Notes: a model not told the origin generated them from the letters alone. DNA of 63,991 nt, filler included, from Octopus bimaculoides (GCF_001194135.2; 5 parts of 4 records of this genome joined end to end with filler, not necessarily neighbours in it); one strand, 5' to 3'. Counted from the first letter of the whole stretch, positions 2,589-23,078 are shown. Program-made: numbers and translations.

Positions 2589-3574
2589 CTCATTCAATGA
2601 GTGAAAGAACACCAGTAGAGACATTAGCCCCAATGGAACAACAGCATTCCATGTAAGGACAAATAAGAGATTATTTATAAAGATTCTGCAGAAAAGTAAA
2701 TGTTAACATTGTTAGTTTAATGAACCAAGAGATTTTAATGAATTAAAATTACACATTTAAAGATGAGAAGCAATCATTATGTTAATAACACTAGTAAAGA
2801 AAGGTGGAGAGACAATGCTAAAATTTAGCTTAATTAAACTAATTAAATATGGAATACAGTGTCTGTGATAAATAATGGAGGAAATGGTCTTTATGGAAAG
2901 GTGAATAATTAAATTGAGCTCCATATTTTCAATGGTAAATATTTGTAGAAAGGTCATTGATGTGTATAACACACTTCTGTTGTCATTCTAAATTATTTCT
3001 TTCAGTTTTCCTTCTTTAAAATCTTGTTATTAGAAAAGAAGACTACTTGGAAGAAGACAATATAAACTCAGCCGCGAAGAGAAAGATGAATATGCAATTA
3101 TAAGTTGAGATAAAGTGATAGATAAGTATAACAGAAAGATAGTTAAGTAACTAAGAATAGACAGGAAAATGCAGACAGGTATACATACAGAGAGAGGGGG
3201 GGGAGAGGGGAGAAGGGGAGAGAGAGAGAGAGTATGAATACATTAGAAATGGATAAATAGACAAAAAGACAAAAACTCAGACAGAAAGAATCTCTGAAAG
3301 ATAATAAAGGCAGTACTAAATCAGATGTTATTTTGATATTTAATCAAGTGTATAAATTATGTAGGCATGTTTGTTACATTTACCTAGACATTCATAGACA
3401 TATGTGTGTGTGTGTGTGTGTGAATGAGTGGAAAAACAAAAGGGAAGGGTACTTGACACATTTAGTAGGAGTTACATGTATTCCTCAAAACAGATTGATT
3501 CAGTTCCATGTGAAACTTTAAGTTGCATGGAACTGAATCAAATTATTTTAGATAATGTATACAGTATATATATA

Positions 3575-3723
3575 TCATCATCATCATCATCATCGTTTAA
3601 CGTCCGCTTTCCATGCTAGCATGGGTTGGACGATTTGACTGAAGACTGGCAAGCACCAGGCTGCACCAGGCTCCAATCTGATCTGGCAGAGTTTCTACAG
3701 CTGGATGCCCTTCCTAATGCCAA
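3575..3723 (-). mobile_element. RTE-LINE 3' tail repeat (family B), runs into a gap
   Basis: (CAT)n then cgtttaacgtccgctttccatgctagcatgggttggacg, near-identical to 24093-24245. Confidence 0.85.
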
Positions 3724-4315
3724 NNNNNNNNNNNNNNNNNNNNNNNNNNNNNNNNNNNNNNNNNNNNNNNNNNNNNNNNNNNNNNNNNNNNNNNNNNNNN
3801 NNNNNNNNNNNNNNNNNNNNNNNNNNNNNNNNNNNNNNNNNNNNNNNNNNNNNNNNNNNNNNNNNNNNNNNNNNNNNNNNNNNNNNNNNNNNNNNNNNNN
3901 NNNNNNNNNNNNNNNNNNNNNNNNNNNNNNNNNNNNNNNNNNNNNNNNNNNNNNNNNNNNNNNNNNNNNNNNNNNNNNNNNNNNNNNNNNNNNNNNNNNN
4001 NNNNNNNNNNNNNNNNNNNNNNNNNNNNNNNNNNNNNNNNNNNNNNNNNNNNNNNNNNTGAAAGTTCATAAAATTCTTATGATGTCAACAACATACAATT
4101 CTTGCTTGTTAGAACAAAGATTCTAAAATGGATAGAGAAATTTGAAGAACTGTTTTGGTCAAATGGTAGAACACCTCTCATGTCTATAGAAGAAGTGAGT
4201 TTGTTTTCCAAGGGCAGCCTTCAGCTTTCTCTATCCAAAAGGGATTTTAACCTAATATTTACATGCTGTATTTTAGAACCATTATGCCAAAAAAGAATTA
4301 TATATAACATACATT

Positions 4316-6419: not shown

Positions 6420-8019
6420 AGTAGGAAGTTTATTGGAGAAAGTGGTGTTTGTATTTGAAAGATGCATAGGAGCCATAAACACTATAGATGGATGGGAAAT
6501 TGATTTTCTCAAATGCCCTGGAGGCTCTCTAGAAGTAGAGGATAATTTTTGCTACCTAGGGGACCTAATTAGCTGTAAGGGAGGATGTACAAAAAGTTTA
6601 ATTTTTAGAATAAGAATAGGATAGAAAAAATTCAGAGCACTTTTACTTCTGTTGGTAATGTCTCTCTCCAAGTGAAAGGAAGATTGTATGATGCATGTGT
6701 ACTCACAACAATGCTACATGGTAGTGAGACATGGGCTTTGAATGCAGAGGATACGCAAAGACTAAAGAGGAATGAAGCTATTATACTCTGCTGGATATGC
6801 AGTGTCAGTGTACATGTGCAACAGAGCACTTGTGAAGTGAGAGAAAAGTTAGGTGTAAGAGTTATTAGATGCAGTGTGCAAGAGAGAAGACTGTACTGGT
6901 TTAATCATGTGATGCATATGAATGTGGACAGTTGCTTAAAGAAGAGCCAATCACTTAAAATGGATGGAACTTGTAGGAGAGGGAGACCTAGAAAAACATG
7001 GGACAAAGTACTGAAGGCCAATCTCAAGAAACTTAGCCTTATGAAGATGACAAAGGATTGAGATATCTGGTGCTTTGCTGTACTCAAGAAGATCCATTCA
7101 CCACAGCAGAATGGATATCCTAAACCACTTTGGTTAATACTTGTCAGTGAGGGATTCTGGTCCACACCCACCCACATCCTCTGTGCTTCCCACCCTGGCA
7201 ACCATTGCCCCCCCCCCCCCGGCAACCATTACCTCCCTCCACATGTCATCTCCTAACACCCATCACTTCTCTATCATCTGAGAGCAGAATAAGCACATAC
7301 TACACCCCCACCCAGCTTTCTCAGTTACCTCCCTCCTCACCCCAAACCACTTCCATTTCCCATTATCTTCCCCCCACCTACTGTCTCCACCAATCACCTC
7401 CTTTCTGTGTCATTCTTCATCATTAACACCTTGCTTATCTGCTATCACCTTCAATGCCCTCACATACCTACTGCAACCCTATATTTTCACACCATCATTT
7501 GTGTCAGTCATCCCTATTCTGCCCAGCTACCCAGTCCAAACCTCTGTATTACCCCCTTATTCTCACCATGCCCAATGTCCCTTGAGTTCATGTCCTCCTG
7601 ACACATCTTCACCACCATATCTCTCCCTATTGCCTTATTTATTTTACTCTCACCTACCCTCCTTTCTTTTTCAACTGGAGTATCCATGTATCTACTCTAC
7701 AGCAAGACACACATCTCTGTCCATCTATACCCCTAATCTCACATCAACTGGCACAAAGCCACTCCACTTTCCCAGCTGAGGGTTTCTTTTTTTTCTGTCT
7801 GGCAAGTTATTTGGTGACCCTGTCAGTGCTTGTGCCACGTAAAAAGCACCAAGTACACTCTGTAAAGTTGTTGGTATCTGGAAGGGCACCCAGCCATAGA
7901 AACCATACCAAACAGACAATGGAGCCTGGTGTAGCTCCTGGTGTTACCAGCTCCTGTCAAACCATCCGACCCATACCACCAACAAAGAAATCTTATATTA
8001 AACAATGATGATGATGATG
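6420..8019 (+). mobile_element. 5'-truncated RTE-clade LINE: RT C-terminus, C-rich 3' UTR and (ATG)n tail
   Basis: Translations FCYLGD, KGRLYDACVLTTMLHGSETW, RRLYWFNHVMHM and GRPRKTW are typical RTE post-RT motifs. One in-frame stop. Ends in a family B tail at 7821-8019. Confidence 0.88.
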
Positions 8020-8067: not shown

Positions 8068-8155
8068 ACATGCACGCATGTACCCCAGCATGCCTACAGT
8101 TCAATAACTGAAACAAGTAAGATCACGATGGTGATGATGATGATGATGATAATAA

Positions 8156-8372
8156 TAATAATCCTTTTTACTGTAGGCACAAGGTCTGAAATTTTAGGGG
8201 AGGAGACTAGTTGATTACATCACCCTCAGTATTTTACTGGTACTTAATCTACTGACCCTGAATGGATGAAAGGCAAAGTTGACCTCAGTGGAATTTGAAC
8301 TCAGAACATAGTGATGGGTGAAATACCACTAAGCATTTCATCCACCATGCTAAGAATTCTGCCAGCCACCTT
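8156..8372 (-). mobile_element. tRNA-derived SINE (family C, Nin/Deu-like central motif)
   Basis: gatgaaaggcaaagttgacctcagtggaatttgaactcagaac (reverse B-box gagttcaaattcc). More than 10 related copies in the window. Confidence 0.85.
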
Positions 8373-8385
8373 AATAATAATAATG

Positions 8386-8420
<35 letters not shown>

Positions 8421-8426
<6 letters not shown>

Positions 8427-8640
8427 CCTTTGTACTGTAGTCACAAGGCCTGAAATTTGTGGGGAGGGATTAAGTCGATTATATCGACCCTCGTGTGTAA
8501 CTGGTACTTATTTAATTGACTCCGAAATGATGAAAGGCAAAGTCAACCTTGGTGGAATATGAACTCAGAATGTAGCAACAGACGATATACTGTTAAGCAT
8601 TTTGCCCGGTGTACTAATGATTCTGCCAGCTTGCTGCCTT
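8421..8640 (-). mobile_element. tRNA-derived SINE (family C), tandem with the previous copy
   Basis: Same structure, separated from the previous copy by (AAT)n. Confidence 0.85.
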
Positions 8641-10804: not shown

Positions 10805-11022
10805 TAAAAGTTTCCAATTTTCCCACAAAGGCAGCCGTTTTATGGGAGAGGAAGTGTTGATTACATCGACCCCAGTGTTCAACTGGTACTTTATTTATCA
10901 ACCCCGAAAGGATGAAAGGCAAAGTTAACCTTGGCAGAATTTGAACTCAGAACGTAGCAACAAACGAAATACCACTAAGCATTTTACCTGGCGTGCTAGC
11001 AATTCTGCCAGTTTGTCACCTT
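10805..11022 (-). mobile_element. tRNA-derived SINE (family C)
   Basis: accccgaaaggatgaaaggcaaagttaaccttggcagaatttgaactcagaacg. Confidence 0.85.
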
Positions 11023-11095
11023 AATAACAACAACAACAACAACAATAATAATAATGATAATAATAATCTTTTCTATAATAATAATAATAATAATA

Positions 11096-11140
<45 letters not shown>

Positions 11141-11161
11141 GTAATAATAATAATAATAATA
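11023..11161. repeat. (AAT)n/(AAC)n microsatellite
   Basis: Direct reading; produces the spurious poly-N ORF at 10993. Confidence 0.95.
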
Positions 11162-11592
11162 AATGCTTAGAATCAAGTCAGGTGAATTATATGCAGGGAA
11201 TGTGTTTAGACAAGCAGTTTTTCTATTTCTTATGTTAAGAATAAAACAAGAAAGAGATTACTAGATACTTTAGACATTCATGAAAAATGTGCTCTGCTTG
11301 TAAATCAGCTTAAAATTTCCAAGTATGTATACAATAAATAAATTGAAACTGAATGTTCTGAAAGATTAAGTTAATAAAAATGTGTATCGTAAACTCATAA
11401 ATTAACAGTAAACATTTATAATAATGATTTTTTTTTGTTGTTGTGGATTATTTTCTTTATTTTGTATACTTATTGTCATAAATGCTGACAGCATGTTTCA
11501 GCTTTCTCCAACAGCTTTAATCTGATGTGTGTTTGTTTGTGTGTGTGTGTGTGTGCACACGCACACGCGTGTACATACATACATACATATAC

Positions 11593-14307: not shown

Positions 14308-14665
14308 TTGTTGTTGGCACTCCGTCGCTTACGACGTCGAGGGTTCCAGTTGATCCGATCAACAGAACAGCCTGCTCGTGAAATTAACGTGCAAGTGGCT
14401 GAGCACTCCACAGACACGTGTACCCTTAACGTAGTTCTCGGGGATATTCAGTGCGACAAGACTGACCCTTTGAATTACAGGTACAGCAGAAACAGGAAGT
14501 AAGAGTGAGAGAGTACAGCAGGGTTCGCCACCATCTCCTGCCGGAGCCTCGTGGAACTTTTAGGTGTTTTCGCTCAATAAATACTCACAACGCCGGGTCT
14601 GGACAACCGCGATCCTATGACCGCGAGTCTGCTGCCCTAACCACTGGGCCATTGCGCCTCCACTG
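14308..14665 (-). mobile_element. Young tRNA-derived SINE (family D) with 9-bp TSD
   Basis: TGTGACAGC at 14299-14307 and 14666-14674. Reverse complement of 20389-20762; CpGs retained. Confidence 0.92.
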
Positions 14666-15638
14666 TGTGACAGCATGCAGTTAGCTTAAAATTATATGAA
14701 GTCAACTGTGCAAATATCTGCAGTGATAGAAGTCCTGTCTTGAATATCACCAAATGTTGAGAAAATGAACATCAGCTGTCCAATTTTGTGGTCTTATGGG
14801 CCTTATCTTGAGTTGAGGGTCATCAAAGCCGTGATGGTAGCTTGTTGCTTGACCTGAGCTGGTAAATGAGGATATATTTTCATTGGCTGCGTGAATAATA
14901 ACTAAAGCACACTCATGAACATTTAATTGAAATATTTTTTGATGGACATAAAGATATTTGGTGTTGGCTATTTACAATGAACAACAAAGATATTTAGTGT
15001 TGGCTATTTATAATGAACAACAATTACTGACTGGGAGAGAAAGACAGACTGGACTGGAATTATCGAAAGCTCTCTGTGTGACAACATGCGGTCACCACCA
15101 AAAAGAGAAACGATGTAAATACTACAGACCATTAAATACGTAGAAAAGGAGTGTTATATTAAAAGATTTCCACTTCTTTTATAGATTCTTTATTAAAAAT
15201 TGATGATGTAATGATCGATAAATTAGTTACACAATCGAACAATGCCCGGTGGTACTGTACACACAAGATGGTTGGAAGCACTCGTAGTCGGACGCCAGTA
15301 GCTAGATGGCGGTCAGCGTTGGAATAGGCAGTGGGATTATCATGATGTGTTGCATAAATAATCTCAAGACAATTAAAACAAAGAATGTAATGTCTACTAC
15401 AATAATACCTGGCAGCAAACCACTGGGTAGGTGACCAACGATAGGCATGAATACTCCACTGGTTTCCCCTCTGATTTTGTCTGGTAACAGGTATTAATCG
15501 TGTGTGTCTGGTACTACGCCATCATGTGGACAATTTTTTCCTGAAATTGCATTTCTAAAATCAGGGTGCGTATTCTACGATGCAGCATCTACCATGCCAC
15601 AAAGAACGGTTATCTGCTTCTAGAGGGAATATCCAGCA

Positions 15639-16074
15639 GGTAATCTTCCAGTTTAGGGAGGTAAAAAAAAGTAAATAAAAATACAAGGGAAATAACCTAA
15701 CGTCTTACTAGTATTATCCGTACTACTCTGAAATTTGATTTTTTTTTTTTTAGCTGTTTATAAATAAATTGATTGAAGTTAATTGTTTATATATAAATCA
15801 CACACGTGGTTGAATATCATAGTACCGGCTGCACAACAACTTATGGTAATCTTCCAGTATAGGGAAATAACGGTCAAACTAAAGCGTTTGACCCGAGCTT
15901 AAAAAAAATTTAGTGTAATAGGTGTAAAACAACTTGCTGTGAACGAATATGAAGAAAAAAATGCGCGCTCGCGAACGGGTGGGGAGAGTACGGATAATAC
16001 TAGTAAGACGTTAAGTCATTTCCCTTGTATTTTTATTTACTTTTTTTTTTACCTCCCTAAACTGGAAGATTACC
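15639..16074. mobile_element. Merlin-like MITE
   Basis: About 85-90 bp TIRs starting GGTAATCTTCCAGTTTAGGGAGG (fits the Merlin GGNRM terminus). Perfect 9-bp TSD TATCCAGCA at 15630-15638 and 16075-16083. Confidence 0.85.
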
Positions 16075-16083
16075 TATCCAGCA

Positions 16084-16843: not shown

Positions 16844-17085
16844 CTGGGTTGGTGCATAATTATTGCGGCTTTTTTTCAACAAATTTTATTGAACAAAAAT
16901 AATAACAACATGTAACAAAAACATCTTTAAATGATTATTCCGGAGCATATTCACCACCTACTTCAATTACTGCTTCCCATTTGCTTGGCAGACGGCCAGA
17001 CTGTCATTTAAAAATGTTTTTGTTAATTATTATTATTATTATTTTTGTTGAATAAAATTTGTTGAAAGAAAAAGCCGCAATAATT
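16844..17085 (-). mobile_element. mariner-derived MITE (internal deletion derivative)
   Basis: TA then CTGGGTTGGTGCATAATTATTGCGG TIR, with an inverted copy at the right end (truncated). Internal minus frame GRLPSKWEAVIEVGGEYAPE* matches a mariner transposase C-terminus. Confidence 0.85.
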
Positions 17086-17517
17086 GGTAGCCTTTTTAAT
17101 GACCTGTTGCAGGAATATTTGGCAGAATCGCTAGACCATTTTGTTGCGTCAATTCTTGAGTTAGGGGAACCTCTTATCGATGGTTGCAGGTGTAATTCAA
17201 GTCTGTGAGGTTCCCAACTTTTCCTGATACGTTTGCTGCGTATATCCAACAATGAACATCATCTGTTTGTGCATCATTGAAGGTATGTCACGATACGAGT
17301 CCGCGTTTCTTCGAACGGTTGTTTCTTTAATAAAACATAAGCGTTTGCACCATTTTCTCCTATCTCAAGTTTTCAGATATTGTTCACACGAACAAACAGA
17401 AAGAATCCTGGCCTATTACGAATTCAAAATAACTATTTAATAATAATATTACGAATCAGAATTCTATCGATTTTTATAAAAGCTTGTATTTAAAAATCTC
17501 GATTAATCAAATACAAA

Positions 17518-18384
17518 ATGCGGTACGACGTTAGAGAATCTCATTACCTCGAATGTTCAAGAAAAGAAAGCAATCTCCATTTTTATTCGTATAACAACGA
17601 AAGTCAAGCAAACGAAGAATGCTCTACGAATATTTCAGATGGTTTTTATATTACTGATATTGATTATTTTCAAAATAGCGGAGAAAATTATTTCACTTTT
17701 AACGAAAGTGAATCCGTGACAGAATTTGAAAATCTTTCTCTAATAGCTGGATACGGAGCAGAATTTTATTCTCCGTGTGTTCCAAATGATGTTTATTGGA
17801 CACATGGTTACTGTCATCCGTCATGGTATCGAGGAGTTTTTACTTCTCATGTCAACTCTTACAATCAAAAACATATAAGTTTATTCAGAACAATAGGCAA
17901 TGCCTGTGTCCAAGAAAATTACAAATGTAACGAATGTGGCTGTCCTTTAATTCATTGGCCGGGGTACATGTACGGAAACTCGGACGACTGGGTCCAACAA
18001 GCGAACCATTCTCACAGTTCTTGCTATCGGGAATATCCACCAACAGGGCCTCAGATGACCGTAGAAAAAATAAATGACAGCTTGAGTAATACTTCTAATG
18101 GTCGCCAATCTGTGTACCCTAACGAAGAAAATTTTATCTGGTATCAAGTCCCAAGACCGTGTCCCAACAATTACTACACTAATCAAGAATATGATTATTA
18201 CAACTGTGACTATAATAATTCTTTATTTCACGACGATGAGTTTGAAGATTTTGTCACCTGGTTCAAAGATGCAAACTCAACACAAGACCACAAGCAATTT
18301 CACGTTTGGGTTTGCAATACTCCCACCCAGTGGGAAAATCAAGAATACGAAGAATTCCAGGTCCTTATGGAAGAATCTGGCTGA
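17518..18384 (+). CDS. Intronless orphan protein, 288 aa, acidic and Tyr/Trp/Cys/Asn-rich
   Basis: 867-nt uninterrupted, non-repetitive ORF in AT-rich DNA. CAAAATG start context, candidate acceptor ttttcag| at 17376 and AATAAA at 18611-18616. No recognisable domain. Confidence 0.7.
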   Translation: MRYDVRESHYLECSRKESNLHFYSYNNESQANEECSTNISDGFYITDIDYFQNSGENYFTFNESESVTEFENLSLIAGYGAEFYSPCVPNDVYWTHGYCHPSWYRGVFTSHVNSYNQKHISLFRTIGNACVQENYKCNECGCPLIHWPGYMYGNSDDWVQQANHSHSSCYREYPPTGPQMTVEKINDSLSNTSNGRQSVYPNEENFIWYQVPRPCPNNYYTNQEYDYYNCDYNNSLFHDDEFEDFVTWFKDANSTQDHKQFHVWVCNTPTQWENQEYEEFQVLMEESG

Positions 18385-18762
18385 AATTCAGTCTGTTATA
18401 GCTCATACAAAAGAAAACATTGACATTTAAAAACAATATACTTACATATTTCTATGATTGTTTACGTCCGAACGGACGAGAAAACGTTTATACACCATCA
18501 ACGATTGCTATGTTAATATTATATTCTGATAAATTATATTTTACCAAATTTTATAAAATATAACAATATTTTGTAATTTGCAGTGCTTTGTGATAGCACA
18601 TTTTATTATTAATAAAACAGAAACGAAAATGGTAGAGATGTTGAATATGTCGGTTAGTATGTAGTATGTCGGTTAGGTTTCTTCTAATAGCAAGTTCAAA
18701 CTTCATTGTACTTCACCTTTTATACTTCCAAGCTTGAATTCTAGAATTTGACTGGAGTATAT

Positions 18763-19470
18763 TTAACCCTTATATCACCTTATTTCTGTTAAAATACACT
18801 GCATTTACATTATTTACATTTGACAGATATTTGTCTTCATCTTGTTTTTTGTTAACACAACGTGTCGGCTGATATACCCTCCAGCCTTCATCATGTGTCT
18901 GGGGAAATTTCAAACCTGGGTTCTCATTCCTAAGGTATTTTTTATCGATGTTGTTATTCAGGTCACTGCCTGGAATCGAACTAGGAATCTTGGGGTTAGT
19001 AGTCCACGCTCTTAACCACTACGCCATATGCACGGGCATATGGCGTAGTGATTAAGAGTTCGATTCCAGGCAGTGACCTGAAAAATAATAATAATAATAA
19101 CAACAACATCGAAAAATACCTTAGGAATGAGAACTCCGATTCGAAATTTCCCCAAGACACCTGCTGAAGGCTGGAGAGTATATCAGCCGAAACATTGTGT
19201 TAACAGCAAACAAGATGAGGACAAATATCCGTCAAATATAAATAATGTACCTAATTCCTCATCTCTTAAATATAATACTGTATTACACTGCATTTCTTTA
19301 TATAAATTTTGAAATTAATGAAGAATTTATCCAAATAATTTTGTCATTAAGCTGGTATTTGGAACATAAATTAACAAGGAATTTTAATGAAGGTTTTAAT
19401 TTAATTTAAAAGAGGAAGTTTTTTTTTATCATAGAATTAGGGGTCAGTCCTAGTGGTGTCAAAAGGTTAC
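18763..19470 (+). mobile_element. piggyBac-like MITE interrupted by a palindromic retroelement
   Basis: TTAA-CCCT left end and AAAAGG-TTAC right end. The body resumes after 19284 and matches 858-1040 and 2404-2588. Confidence 0.7.
18807..19283. mobile_element. Head-to-head palindromic tRNA-headed element carrying Penelope-type hammerhead motifs
   Basis: Arms 18807-19031 and 19036-19248 are inverted copies. A box TGGCGTAGTGG and B box GTTCGATTCC. 12-bp TSD TACACTGCATTT at 18795-18806 and 19284-19295. HHR-like cores at about 19156-19201 (+) and 18854-18899 (-). Confidence 0.85.
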
Positions 19471-20388: not shown

Positions 20389-20762
20389 GTGGAGGCGCAA
20401 TGGCCCAGTGGTTAGGGCAGCGGACTCGCGGTCATAAGATCACGGTTTTGATTCCCAGACCAGGCGTTGTGAGTGTTTATTGAGCGAAAACACCTAAAGC
20501 TCCACGAGGCTTCAGCAGGGGATGGTGGCGAACTCTGCTGTACTCTTTCACCACAACTTTCTCTCACTCTTACTTCCTGTTTCTGTTGTGCCTGTAATTG
20601 AAAGGGTTAGCCTTGTCACGCTGAATATCCCCAAGAACTACGTTAAGGGTACACATGTCTGTGGAGTGCTCAGCCACTTGCACGTTAATTTCATGAGCAG
20701 GCTGTTCCATTGATCGGATCAACTGGACCCTTGTCGTCGTAAGCGACGGAGTGCCAACAACA
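20389..20762 (+). mobile_element. Young tRNA-derived SINE (family D) with 12-bp TSD
   Basis: Head gtggaggcgcaatggcccagtggttagggc. TSD ATAATCCTTTCT at 20377-20388 and 20763-20774, which is the tail end of a family C SINE. Confidence 0.92.
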
Positions 20763-20981
20763 ATAATCCTTTCTAATTAAAAGCACAAGGCTTGAAATTT
20801 GGTGGGAGGGAGCTAGTCGATTACATTGACTACAGTGTTTCACAGGTACTTAATTCATCGAGCCTGAAAGGATGAAAGGCAAAGTTGACCTTGGTGAAAT
20901 TTGGACTCAGAACATAGTGACGGGCAAAATACTGCCAAGCATTTCATCCAACATGCTAATGATTCTGTCAGCTCACCACCT
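20763..20981 (-). mobile_element. tRNA-derived SINE (family C), target of the family D insertion
   Basis: Homology to the other family C copies. Confidence 0.85.
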
Positions 20982-22617: not shown

Positions 22618-22996
22618 TACTGTGGTCATGCTGGAGCACCACCTTGAAGAACTTTTAGTTGAATGAATCAATCCCAGTACTTAATATTTTTTTTGATAAG
22701 CTTGGTACTTTTTCTATCAGTCTCTTTTTATCGAACAGCTAAGTTATGGGGATGGGAACATACTGACACCAGTTGTCAAGTGGTGGTGGGGGACAAATAC
22801 AGACACAAAGACACACACACACATATATTTAACAGACTTCGTTCAGTTTCTGTCTACCAAATCCACTCACAAGGCTTGAGTTGGCCCAAGGCTATAATAG
22901 AAGACATCTGCCTAATGTGCCATTCAGTGAAACTGAACCGAGAACCATATAGTTGGGAAGCAAGCTCCTTATTACACAGCCATGCTTGCACCTATG
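22618..22996 (-). mobile_element. SINE family A, near full length and degenerate
   Basis: Tail catgctggagcacc through head ...ttacacagccatgcttgcacc. Confidence 0.82.
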
Positions 22997-23078
22997 ATCT
23001 AATAAAATATAATGTTTTGTTATTAATTTGATGTTTGGGAAATAACTTAGCAATGTTTAGAAGCTTTTAATTTGAACA

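What the first reader, a model, noticed from the sequence alone, without database searches (positions are those of the whole stretch)
17518..18384. Orphan 288-aa aromatic-rich acidic protein
Seen: the only long, non-repetitive, stop-free ORF in the window that is not recognisably TE-derived. It has a good CAAAATG context and a downstream AATAAA. Hand counts give about 27 Tyr, 8 Trp and 12 Cys, with high Asn/Glu/Ser and little Leu/Lys/Ala. There is no signal peptide or TM segment. A Cys/His cluster (CVQENYKCNECGCPLIH) could bind metal. Inference: a lineage-specific gene. Its aromatic-rich, disordered composition recalls cephalopod novelties such as reflectins, but it lacks the Met/Arg-rich reflectin motif, so it is not called one. 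A viral or TE-captured origin is also possible.
Basis: partly seen in the sequence, partly recalled or inferred. Interest (0 to 1): 0.7.

Follow-up and report, generated by a model that had tools for sequence, protein, structure and literature searches.

The report
Conserved intronless orphan gene, aromatic-rich acidic protein
The 288-codon reading frame is a real, selectively maintained single-exon gene with its own conserved promoter region and poly(A) signal, encoding an acidic, tyrosine/asparagine-rich protein that matches no known family, so it is a true orphan gene whose function remains unknown.

Summary
The ORF at 17518-18384 (+) is exactly as described: 288 aa with 27 Tyr, 8 Trp, 12 Cys, pI 4.5, no signal peptide or TM segment, and a CAAAATG start. 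The only AATAAA within 600 nt lies 227 nt past the stop. It is the longest genuine ORF in the piece; the longer "ORFs" are N-run artefacts.

Only one homologue exists anywhere searched, a 288-aa protein on a 1.9-kb Logan contig (89% aa, 93.5% nt identity). The two loci are orthologous. A 477-nt repeat with a 12-nt target-site duplication is inserted in the window, and the contig has the empty site.

The ORF shows coding constraint: no indels in 867 nt (about 11 expected), dN/dS 0.30 (P=6e-5), and only frame +1 open in both species. The 240 nt upstream are non-coding yet more conserved than synonymous sites, and they include a TATAAAAG box. Conservation collapses just after the AATAAA.

Pfam, PDB, PHROGs, NCBIfam, a full HMMER scan of 1.84 billion proteins, and viral, prokaryotic and metagenome DNA scans found nothing else. 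AlphaFold was uninformative. It is not a reflectin.

Verdict: a genuine taxonomically restricted gene. Its mechanism (aromatic/acidic interaction motifs plus a conserved Cys4-His cluster) is only inferred. Interest is moderate.

The parts
17280..17517 (+). Conserved non-coding upstream block (proximal promoter and/or 5' leader)
   Evidence: It is 94.5% identical to L001 with no indels, and 98% identical over 17400-17499. Synonymous sites in the ORF differ at pS 0.146, and the outer flanks are 62-90% identical with indels. The binomial P is 7e-6. All six frames carry stops in both species, and the 62-aa uORF at 17252-17440 is interrupted by a stop in L001.
17476..17483 (+). TATAAAAG, a TATA-box-like element 35-42 nt upstream of the ATG
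   Evidence: Read directly from the sequence and identical in L001. The function is inferred. It would imply a very short 5' leader unless transcription starts further upstream.
17415..17456 (+). Two copies of ATTACGAAT (17415-17423 and 17448-17456), a candidate regulatory motif pair
   Evidence: These are the only two occurrences in the whole piece (0.24 expected). Both lie in the conserved block and both are identical in L001. This is a post-hoc observation and the function is not tested.
17518..18384 (+). Coding sequence: 288 aa, 34.2 kDa, pI 4.5, single exon
   Evidence: Against L001 there are 56 substitutions and 0 indels, distributed 17/13/26 by codon position. dN 0.048, dS 0.163, omega 0.30, synonymous excess P=5.8e-5. 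Only frame +1 is open in both species.
17518..17646 (+). Invariant N-terminal module (aa 1-43)
   Evidence: There are 3 synonymous and 0 non-synonymous codon changes.
17905..17955 (+). Cys/His cluster C130-x6-C137-x2-C140-x-C142-x3-H146, a candidate metal-binding knuckle
   Evidence: All five ligand-type residues are conserved in P0001, while 3 of the intervening residues changed (V131D, N138K, P143S). Metal binding is inferred, not shown. There is no Pfam or PDB match.
18118..18381 (+). Conserved aromatic/acidic C-terminal third (aa 201-288), including DDEFEDFVTWFKD and EYEEFQVLMEE
   Evidence: There are 6 amino-acid differences in 88 residues. Net charge is about -14 and there are 19 aromatic residues. 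AlphaFold suggests helices at about aa 239-252 and 274-286, but with pLDDT 42-54.
18385..18640 (+). Probable 3' UTR
   Evidence: The interval 18431-18620 is 90.5% identical to L001 with no indels. Two indels lie just after the stop. Identity falls to 62-77% with indels from about 18620 onward.
18611..18616 (+). AATAAA polyadenylation signal
   Evidence: It is the only AATAAA in 18300-19000 and is conserved in L001. It is followed by a GT-rich stretch at 18637-18680 in the window and a comparable one in L001. Conservation ends just downstream.

Best explanation
This is a genuine, single-copy, intronless, taxonomically restricted (orphan) protein-coding gene. Shown: the reading frame is maintained by purifying selection in two species at an orthologous locus. 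Also shown: it has a constrained non-coding region directly upstream, containing a TATA box, and a constrained 3' UTR that ends at a conserved AATAAA. Together these define a compact transcription unit of about 1.1-1.4 kb (roughly 17280/17509 to 18640). Inferred: the product has no signal peptide or membrane segment, so it stays in the cytosol or nucleus. It is a 34-kDa, strongly acidic protein (net charge -28). It is enriched 2-3 fold in Tyr, Trp, Asn and Glu, and depleted about 3 fold in Leu, Ile, Lys and Arg, relative to what its own DNA composition would encode. That bias indicates the composition itself is selected. My best guess at the mechanism, with only about 25% confidence for this step, is that the protein acts by binding or self-association rather than catalysis. 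In that model the dense aromatic 'stickers' set in acidic sequence (for example DDEFEDFVTWFKD and EYEEFQVLMEE) mediate protein-protein or multivalent self-interaction. The conserved C-x6-C-x2-C-x-C-x3-H cluster would hold a metal ion or act as a redox-sensitive cross-link. This would be functionally analogous to aromatic-driven assembling proteins such as reflectins, but not homologous to them.
For: The ORF and its composition are confirmed. The one homologue, P0001/L001, is full length and 89% identical at the amino-acid level. Orthology is supported by the flanks being colinear across a 477-nt insertion. That insertion has a 12-nt TSD in the window and an empty site in L001. Coding constraint is strong. 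There are 0 indels in 867 nt against 11 gap openings in 834 nt of aligned flank (Poisson P=1e-5). Omega is 0.30, with 23 synonymous of 56 changes (P=5.8e-5). Random substitution at this density would leave the frame stop-free only 3.8% of the time. Only frame +1 is open in both species. The upstream 238 nt are non-coding but 94.5% conserved (P=7e-6), with a conserved TATAAAAG. The 3' UTR is conserved up to the AATAAA. The composition departs from the base-composition expectation (chi-square P=2.5e-16). The Cys/His cluster is conserved while neighbouring residues vary. There is no signal peptide and no TM segment, and no N-terminal extension is possible.
Against: There is no expression evidence of any kind. 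The window's exact protein is not on record in the assembly collection, and the homologue occurs on a single contig from a single run. Selection is estimated from one pairwise comparison only. The mechanism rests on composition and motif inspection. Both AlphaFold runs were uninformative (pLDDT 32 and 42), and no homologue with a known function exists. N-glycosylation sequons are mildly enriched (9 against 4.3 expected, P=0.018). The Cys count stays at 12 in both species despite one loss and one gain. Both features would fit an extracellular protein better than a cytosolic one.
Confidence: 0.72

Rival explanations
1. The gene was captured or domesticated from an unsampled virus or transposable element. 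In this reading, an intronless ORF with a compact TATA promoter and its own poly(A) signal was acquired horizontally and then co-opted by the host.
For: The architecture is compact, intronless and TATA-proximal. There are no cellular homologues at all. The neighbourhood is repeat-rich, with SINE-like, LINE and palindromic elements within a few kb.
Against: There is no match in IMG/VR viral contigs, PHROGs, Pfam, or the 1.84-billion-protein library, which includes viral proteins. There are no terminal repeats or TSD around the conserved block itself. The flanking palindromic element at the 3' side is an independent later insertion. No second copy exists in the piece and only one homologous contig exists in the whole collection, so it is not a multicopy element. 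No other viral-like or TE-like ORF lies nearby.
Confidence: 0.1
2. The product is a secreted or extracellular glycoprotein, for example a matrix, adhesive or gamete-recognition protein, stabilised by disulfides and N-glycans.
For: There are nine N-x-S/T sequons against 4.3 expected from shuffles (P=0.018), and six are conserved in the orthologue. There are 12 Cys in both species, with C87F offset by W158C so the count stays even. Acidic Tyr-rich composition is common in molluscan matrix proteins; that last point is from general knowledge, not tested here.
Against: There is no signal peptide or hydrophobic segment anywhere (maximum KD19 0.57). The first 43 codons are clearly coding, with 3 synonymous and 0 non-synonymous changes. 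No upstream exon can be spliced in: there is an in-frame stop at -9, no AG before the ATG in the window, and a TAG at -2 in L001. Sequon enrichment is marginal for a post-hoc test.
Confidence: 0.08
3. The gene was born de novo recently from AT-rich non-coding DNA, and its protein has little or no evolved function. This concerns origin and partly overlaps with the best explanation.
For: There are no homologues beyond one close relative. It is a single exon, and no confident fold is predicted.
Against: At 288 codons it is very long for a young de novo ORF. Its composition is far from what the local DNA would encode (Leu 3.1% against 10.7%, Ile 3.1% against 8.5%, Lys 2.1% against 6.1%, Glu 9.4% against 3.3%; chi-square P=2.5e-16). 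Omega is 0.30, two modules are invariant, and the promoter is constrained. These features indicate an established, functional gene. Divergence beyond recognition from an older gene is equally possible.
Confidence: 0.07
4. The ORF is a chance open frame or a decaying pseudogene with no function.
For: An iid model at 35% GC predicts roughly one 290-codon stop-free run by chance per Gb-scale genome (my estimate). No expression data are available.
Against: The frame is intact and free of indels in a second species at 6.5% nucleotide divergence. There is a significant synonymous excess, and both the promoter and the 3' UTR are constrained.
Confidence: 0.03

Closest known systems
Reflectins (cephalopod iridocyte proteins)
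   Same: Both lack a signal peptide. Both are strongly depleted in Lys, Leu, Ile and Ala: 10.4% combined here, against about 29% expected from the base composition. Both are unusually rich in Tyr and Trp. For reflectins, aromatic residues are proposed to drive assembly where aliphatic hydrophobics are lacking (PMC9779258).
   Different: This protein has no reflectin N-terminal motif and no [M/F]D-x5-MD-x5-MD repeat. Met is 1.4% and Arg 2.8%, where reflectins are rich in both. Net charge is -28, where reflectins have cationic linkers. It has no internal repeats or block-copolymer layout. No reflectin was recovered by the exhaustive HMMER search. It is not a family member.
Taxonomically restricted (orphan) genes in general
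   Same: There is no detectable homologue outside a very narrow group, no known domain, a single exon and a biased composition. This matches the general description of orphan genes in the abstracts retrieved (PMC12684174, PMC6542195).
   Different: It is longer than typical young orphans, and its purifying selection and promoter conservation are clearer. Its composition is not the one expected from translating local non-coding DNA.
Small Cys/His zinc knuckles and treble-clef-like metal sites
   Same: The spacing C-x6-C-x2-C-x-C-x3-H contains a CxxC pair and a nearby His, and all are conserved. This is the kind of arrangement that binds zinc in many proteins (general knowledge).
   Different: No zinc-finger family in Pfam matches, even at E<=10, and there is no PDB sequence match. 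The spacing does not fit the CCHC knuckle C-x2-C-x4-H-x4-C. The resemblance is a lead only.
Pfam DUF4649 and DUF3719
   Same: These were the only Pfam alignments returned, to aa 9-50 and aa 195-220.
   Different: The scores of 16.5 and 12.9 bits fall below the gathering cut-offs of 27 and 23, with E-values of 0.0098 and 0.094. Neither is significant, and I treat them as noise.

Membership tests
Reflectin | Repeated reflectin motifs [M/F]D-x5-MD-x5-MD-x3/4 (definition from PMC9779258) | tested here: not met
   A regex search of the 288-aa protein found none. The protein has only 4 Met in total.
Reflectin | Conserved N-terminal motif MEPMSRM(T/S)MDF... | tested here: not met
   The N-terminus is MRYDVRESHYLECSRKES.
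Reflectin | Composition: very high Met, Arg, Tyr and Trp; essentially no Lys, Leu, Ile or Ala; cationic linkers | tested here: not met
   Tyr (9.4%) and Trp (2.8%) are high and K/L/I/A are low (2.1/3.1/3.1/2.1%). But Met is 1.4% and Arg 2.8%, and the protein is acidic (pI 4.5, 42 acidic against 14 basic residues). The criterion is met only in part.
Reflectin | Detectable sequence homology to family members | tested here: not met
   A profile HMMER search of 1.84 billion representative proteins returned only P0001. The word-indexed search of 5.8 billion returned only P0001.
Taxonomically restricted (orphan) protein-coding gene | A real protein-coding gene, with the frame conserved under purifying selection | tested here: met
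   Omega is 0.30 (P=5.8e-5), there are 0 indels (P=1e-5), and only frame +1 is open in both species.
Taxonomically restricted (orphan) protein-coding gene | No homologue outside a narrow lineage | tested here: met
   Met at the level of predicted proteins: Pfam, PDB, PHROGs, NCBIfam, the 5.8-billion and 1.84-billion protein libraries, and viral, prokaryotic and metagenome DNA scans gave only one close orthologue. Still missing is a tblastn against unannotated genomes of related animals, which these tools do not offer.
Taxonomically restricted (orphan) protein-coding gene | Transcribed and translated | not testable with these tools
   No RNA-seq or proteomic data were accessible. The library type and organism of SRR11869384 could not be found.
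Transposable-element or viral gene | Homology to TE or viral proteins, multicopy distribution, terminal repeats or TSD bounding the unit | tested here: not met
   There were no hits. It is single copy in the piece and occurs on one contig in the collection. No repeats bound the conserved block 17088-18806. The adjacent 3' element is a separate insertion with its own TSD.
Processed retrogene | A multi-exon parent gene, a poly(A) remnant after the 3' end, and flanking TSDs | tested here: not met
   No paralogue or parent was found anywhere. There is no A-run after the AATAAA. The only candidate direct repeat (17 nt, 15/17 matches, 17327 and 18609) is at chance level for AT-rich DNA (and my estimate).

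The most novel reading that the evidence does not exclude
The protein founds a previously undescribed class of intracellular self-assembling or condensate-forming material protein. It would be an acidic counterpart of reflectins, built from Tyr/Trp/Phe stickers in an Asn/Glu/Ser matrix, nearly devoid of aliphatic and basic residues, and switched by metal or redox chemistry at its conserved Cys4-His cluster. It would underlie a lineage-specific tissue property.
Probability: 0.1. Interest if true: 0.7.

Novelty: new member of a known kind. Interest (0 to 1): 0.35.

Why it matters
Orphan genes are common, but few come with clean evidence that they are real. This one has an orthologous second copy, significant purifying selection, a constrained promoter and a constrained 3' UTR. 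It is therefore a safe annotation target that automated pipelines may have missed; the window's exact protein is not on record in the collection searched. Its composition is clearly selected rather than inherited from AT-rich DNA, being aromatic- and acid-rich and poor in aliphatic and basic residues. It also carries a conserved Cys/His cluster. These features make it a tractable candidate for studying how lineage-specific proteins with unusual physical chemistry arise. Without expression or functional data, it remains one orphan among many.

Tried and rejected
Searches that found nothing:
- Pfam at E<=10 gave only sub-threshold DUF4649 and DUF3719 alignments, which I reject as noise.
- The PDB sequence search at E<=10 gave nothing.
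- PHROGs and NCBIfam gave nothing meaningful.
- The exhaustive HMMER profile search returned only the known orthologue.
- Back-translated scans of IMG/VR, GTDB genomes and JGI metagenomes found no relative.

Structure:
- AlphaFold2 on the two-sequence alignment gave mean pLDDT 31.8, and on the conserved C-terminal third gave 42.1.
- I deliberately did not run a fold search, because matches to such models would be meaningless.

Local checks:
- There are no paralogues in the piece and no internal repeats.
- Rfam and tRNA scans of the piece gave nothing.
- Ten of the other long stop-free frames in the piece gave no Pfam domain except a sub-threshold RESP18 alignment.
- I considered the upstream uORF (17252-17440, with a hydrophobic start MNIICLCIIEG and a GT after codon 10) as a possible signal-peptide exon. 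I rejected it because it is interrupted by a stop in L001, the only good acceptor leads to a stop after 18 codons, and the main ORF's first 43 codons are themselves coding.
- I considered the inverted SINE-like pair (14308-14663 and 20389-20763) as termini of a composite element. There is no support for this: they look like ordinary tRNA-derived SINE copies, and a third partial copy lies at 27003-27157.

Organism identification failed:
- SRR11869384 and GCA_024449705/JAANSU are absent from the paper library.
- The LINE fragment's relatives are anonymous short contigs.

Full report
**Observation**

The window has an ATG-to-stop ORF at 17518-18384 on the + strand, encoding 288 aa. Asn is 31, Glu 27 and Ser 27, and Leu, Lys and Ala are scarce at 9, 6 and 6.

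The protein is 34.2 kDa with pI 4.5 (42 acidic and 14 basic residues) and 17.7% aromatic residues. Its most hydrophobic 19-residue window averages only 0.57 on the Kyte-Doolittle scale, so it has no signal peptide or TM segment.

The start context is CAAAATG. The AATAAA at 18611-18616 is the only one within 600 nt of the stop. The Cys/His cluster is aa 130-146.

The stop-free run of 296 codons exceeds every one of 200 six-frame shuffles of the piece (maximum 232). The nominally longer frames in the piece all run through the two assembly gaps at 3724-4058 and 24403-25332. A Gb-sized AT-rich genome could still hold roughly one such frame by chance, so I looked for comparative evidence.

**One homologue, at an orthologous locus**

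The word-indexed search of 5.8 billion proteins returned a single hit, P0001. It is 288 aa, 89% identical and covers the full length. It is encoded on a 1,926-nt Logan contig from run SRR11869384, fetched as L001.

L001 aligns to window 17088-18806. The alignment then breaks and resumes at window 19284. The 477 nt in between (18807-19283) form a palindromic repeat element flanked by a 12-nt direct duplication, TACACTGCATTT (18795-18806 and 19284-19295). L001 carries one copy of that 12-mer (TACACTGCCTTT) and no element.

This is a classic filled-site against empty-site pair. The two loci are therefore orthologous, and the element inserted in the window's lineage after the split.

At the 5' side, homology starts 3 nt after another palindromic element (16858-17085). 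The first 117 nt of L001 match nothing in the piece, so that break is unresolved.

**Coding constraint**

Across the 867-nt ORF there are 56 substitutions and no indel. The 834 aligned flanking nucleotides contain 11 gap openings (Poisson P=1e-5). Substitutions fall 17/13/26 by codon position.

| Measure (Nei-Gojobori) | Value |
|---|---|
| dN | 0.048 |
| dS | 0.163 |
| omega | 0.30 |

Twenty-three of the 56 changes are synonymous, where 18% would be expected (P=5.8e-5). Random substitution at this density would keep the frame open only 3.8% of the time. Frame +1 is the only open frame in both species; every other frame has 8-31 stops.

Constraint is uneven:

| Region (aa) | Synonymous codon changes | Non-synonymous codon changes |
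|---|---|---|
| 1-43 | 3 | 0 |
| 44-102 | 4 | 11 |
| 103-125 | 1 | 0 |
| 126-200 | 9 | 15 |
| 201-288 | 4 | 6 |

The ATG is the true start. An in-frame stop lies 9 codons upstream with no AG between it and the ATG, and L001 has a TAG at codon -2.

**Gene anatomy**

- **Upstream block.** The 238 nt upstream of the ATG (17280-17517) are 94.5% identical with no indel, and 98% identical over 17400-17499. That is significantly more conserved than synonymous sites (P=7e-6).
- **It is not coding.** The block has stops in all six frames in both species, and the uORF at 17252-17440 is interrupted in L001.
- **Motifs in the block.** It contains a perfectly conserved TATAAAAG at 17476-17483. It also holds the only two ATTACGAAT copies in the piece, 33 nt apart.
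- **Downstream.** The interval 18431-18620 is 90.5% identical without indels. Identity drops to 62-77% with indels right after the conserved AATAAA and its GT-rich downstream stretch.
- **Overall.** Direct reading therefore suggests a compact, unspliced transcription unit of about 1.1-1.4 kb. The TSS and poly(A) site are inferred, not shown.

**What the protein is not**

- Pfam gave only sub-threshold noise, and PDB sequences, PHROGs and NCBIfam gave nothing.
- An exhaustive HMMER profile search of 1.84 billion representative proteins returned only P0001.
- Scans of IMG/VR, GTDB genomes and JGI metagenomes found no relative.
- The piece contains no paralogue, and the protein has no internal repeat.
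- AlphaFold2 gave pLDDT 31.8 for the full length with 2 sequences, and 42.1 for aa 196-288 alone. I did not run a fold search on these models.
- Tested against the reflectin definition in PMC9779258, the protein fails on motifs, Met/Arg content, charge and homology. It shares only the K/L/I/A depletion and the Tyr/Trp richness.

**What the composition says**

Relative to what its own base composition would encode, the protein is enriched in some residues and depleted in others (chi-square P=2.5e-16):

| Residue | Observed % | Expected % |
|---|---|---|
| Glu | 9.4 | 3.3 |
| Asn | 10.8 | 5.8 |
| Tyr | 9.4 | 5.0 |
| Trp | 2.8 | 1.0 |
| Leu | 3.1 | 10.7 |
| Ile | 3.1 | 8.5 |
| Lys | 2.1 | 6.1 |
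| Arg | 2.8 | 7.1 |

Other stop-free frames in the piece follow the expectation. The composition is therefore a selected property. That argues against a chance frame and against a very young de novo ORF.

**Mechanism (inferred)**

With no signal peptide, the product should be cytosolic or nuclear. Its conserved features are:
- an invariant N-terminal 43 aa;
- an invariant segment, WYRGVFTSHVNSYNQKHISLFRT (aa 103-125);
- a C-x6-C-x2-C-x-C-x3-H cluster whose ligand-type residues are kept while 3 of the intervening residues changed;
- an aromatic/acidic C-terminal third.

I consider a non-enzymatic binding or self-assembly role the most likely. It would work through aromatic and acidic motifs, with a small metal or redox site. 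I put only about 25% on that step.

A rival reading as a secreted glycoprotein rests on a mild sequon excess (9 against 4.3, P=0.018) and an even, maintained Cys count. The N-terminus contradicts it.

A viral or TE capture has no positive evidence, but it cannot be excluded for an unsampled donor.

**Limits**

- The organism of the window, and that of SRR11869384, could not be identified.
- No expression data were available.
- Selection rests on one species pair.

**Verdict**

It is a well-supported orphan gene with an unusual, selected composition. It is worth annotating and worth an expression check. Orphan genes as such are common, and nothing here yet points to a new mechanism.

Noticed in passing
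window 18795-19295: A 477-nt palindromic repeat element (18807-19283, with arms of about 18806-19031 and 19036-19249) is flanked by a 12-nt target-site duplication, TACACTGCATTT. The orthologous contig L001 has the empty site. The insertion therefore happened after the two lineages split.
   Followed up: yes
window 16858-17085: A second hairpin-like element of 228 nt, whose two halves are about 74-92% complementary, ends 3 nt before homology to L001 begins. L001 1-117 matches nothing in the piece, so I cannot tell which lineage carries the insertion or deletion.
   Followed up: partly
window 14308-14663, 20389-20763, 27003-27157: These are copies of a tRNA-derived SINE-like repeat with a tRNA-like head (GGCGCAATGGCCCAGTGGTTAGGG...). 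Two copies in inverted orientation (87-95% identical in blocks) lie about 3 kb either side of the gene, and a third partial copy lies further away.
   Followed up: partly
window 15638-16075: Another 438-nt element has 89-nt terminal inverted arms at 95% identity, which is MITE-like.
   Followed up: no
window 6609-7058 (+): A 150-aa stop-free frame looks to me like the C-terminal tail of a LINE ORF2; it ends ...GRPRKTWDKV, and this reading is from my own knowledge, not tested here. It is 52-63% identical to anonymous short contigs in ENA, Logan and NCBI, including GCA_024449705.1. It has no Pfam domain.
   Followed up: partly
window 3574-3723, 24093-24244, 23427-23576: The same repeat of about 150 nt (90% identical copies, with more diverged copies at about 7871, 28925 and 30919) abuts both assembly gaps (N runs at 3724-4058 and 24403-25332). 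The gaps probably reflect this repeat family.
   Followed up: partly
window 17415-17423 and 17448-17456: ATTACGAAT occurs only twice in the 31.6-kb piece (0.24 expected). Both copies lie in the conserved promoter block, 33 nt apart, and both are identical in the orthologue. It is a candidate transcription-factor site pair, noticed post hoc.
   Followed up: partly
window 17252-17440 (+): A 62-aa upstream ORF lies in the conserved block. It has a hydrophobic start and a GT after codon 10, so it resembles a signal-peptide exon. However, it is interrupted by a stop codon in L001, so it is not conserved as coding.
   Followed up: yes
window 8149-8630; 11022-11162; 28408-28501; 30827-30940: There is a 264-nt unit repeated 1.8 times, plus long microsatellites: (TAA)47, (CA)47 and (TCA)38. 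This is typical repeat-rich intergenic or intronic animal DNA.
   Followed up: no
window 22663-23028 (+): A 122-aa ORF with a hydrophobic N-terminus gives a sub-threshold Pfam RESP18 alignment (E 0.0018, 18.9 bits against a cut-off of 25). It is probably noise.
   Followed up: no
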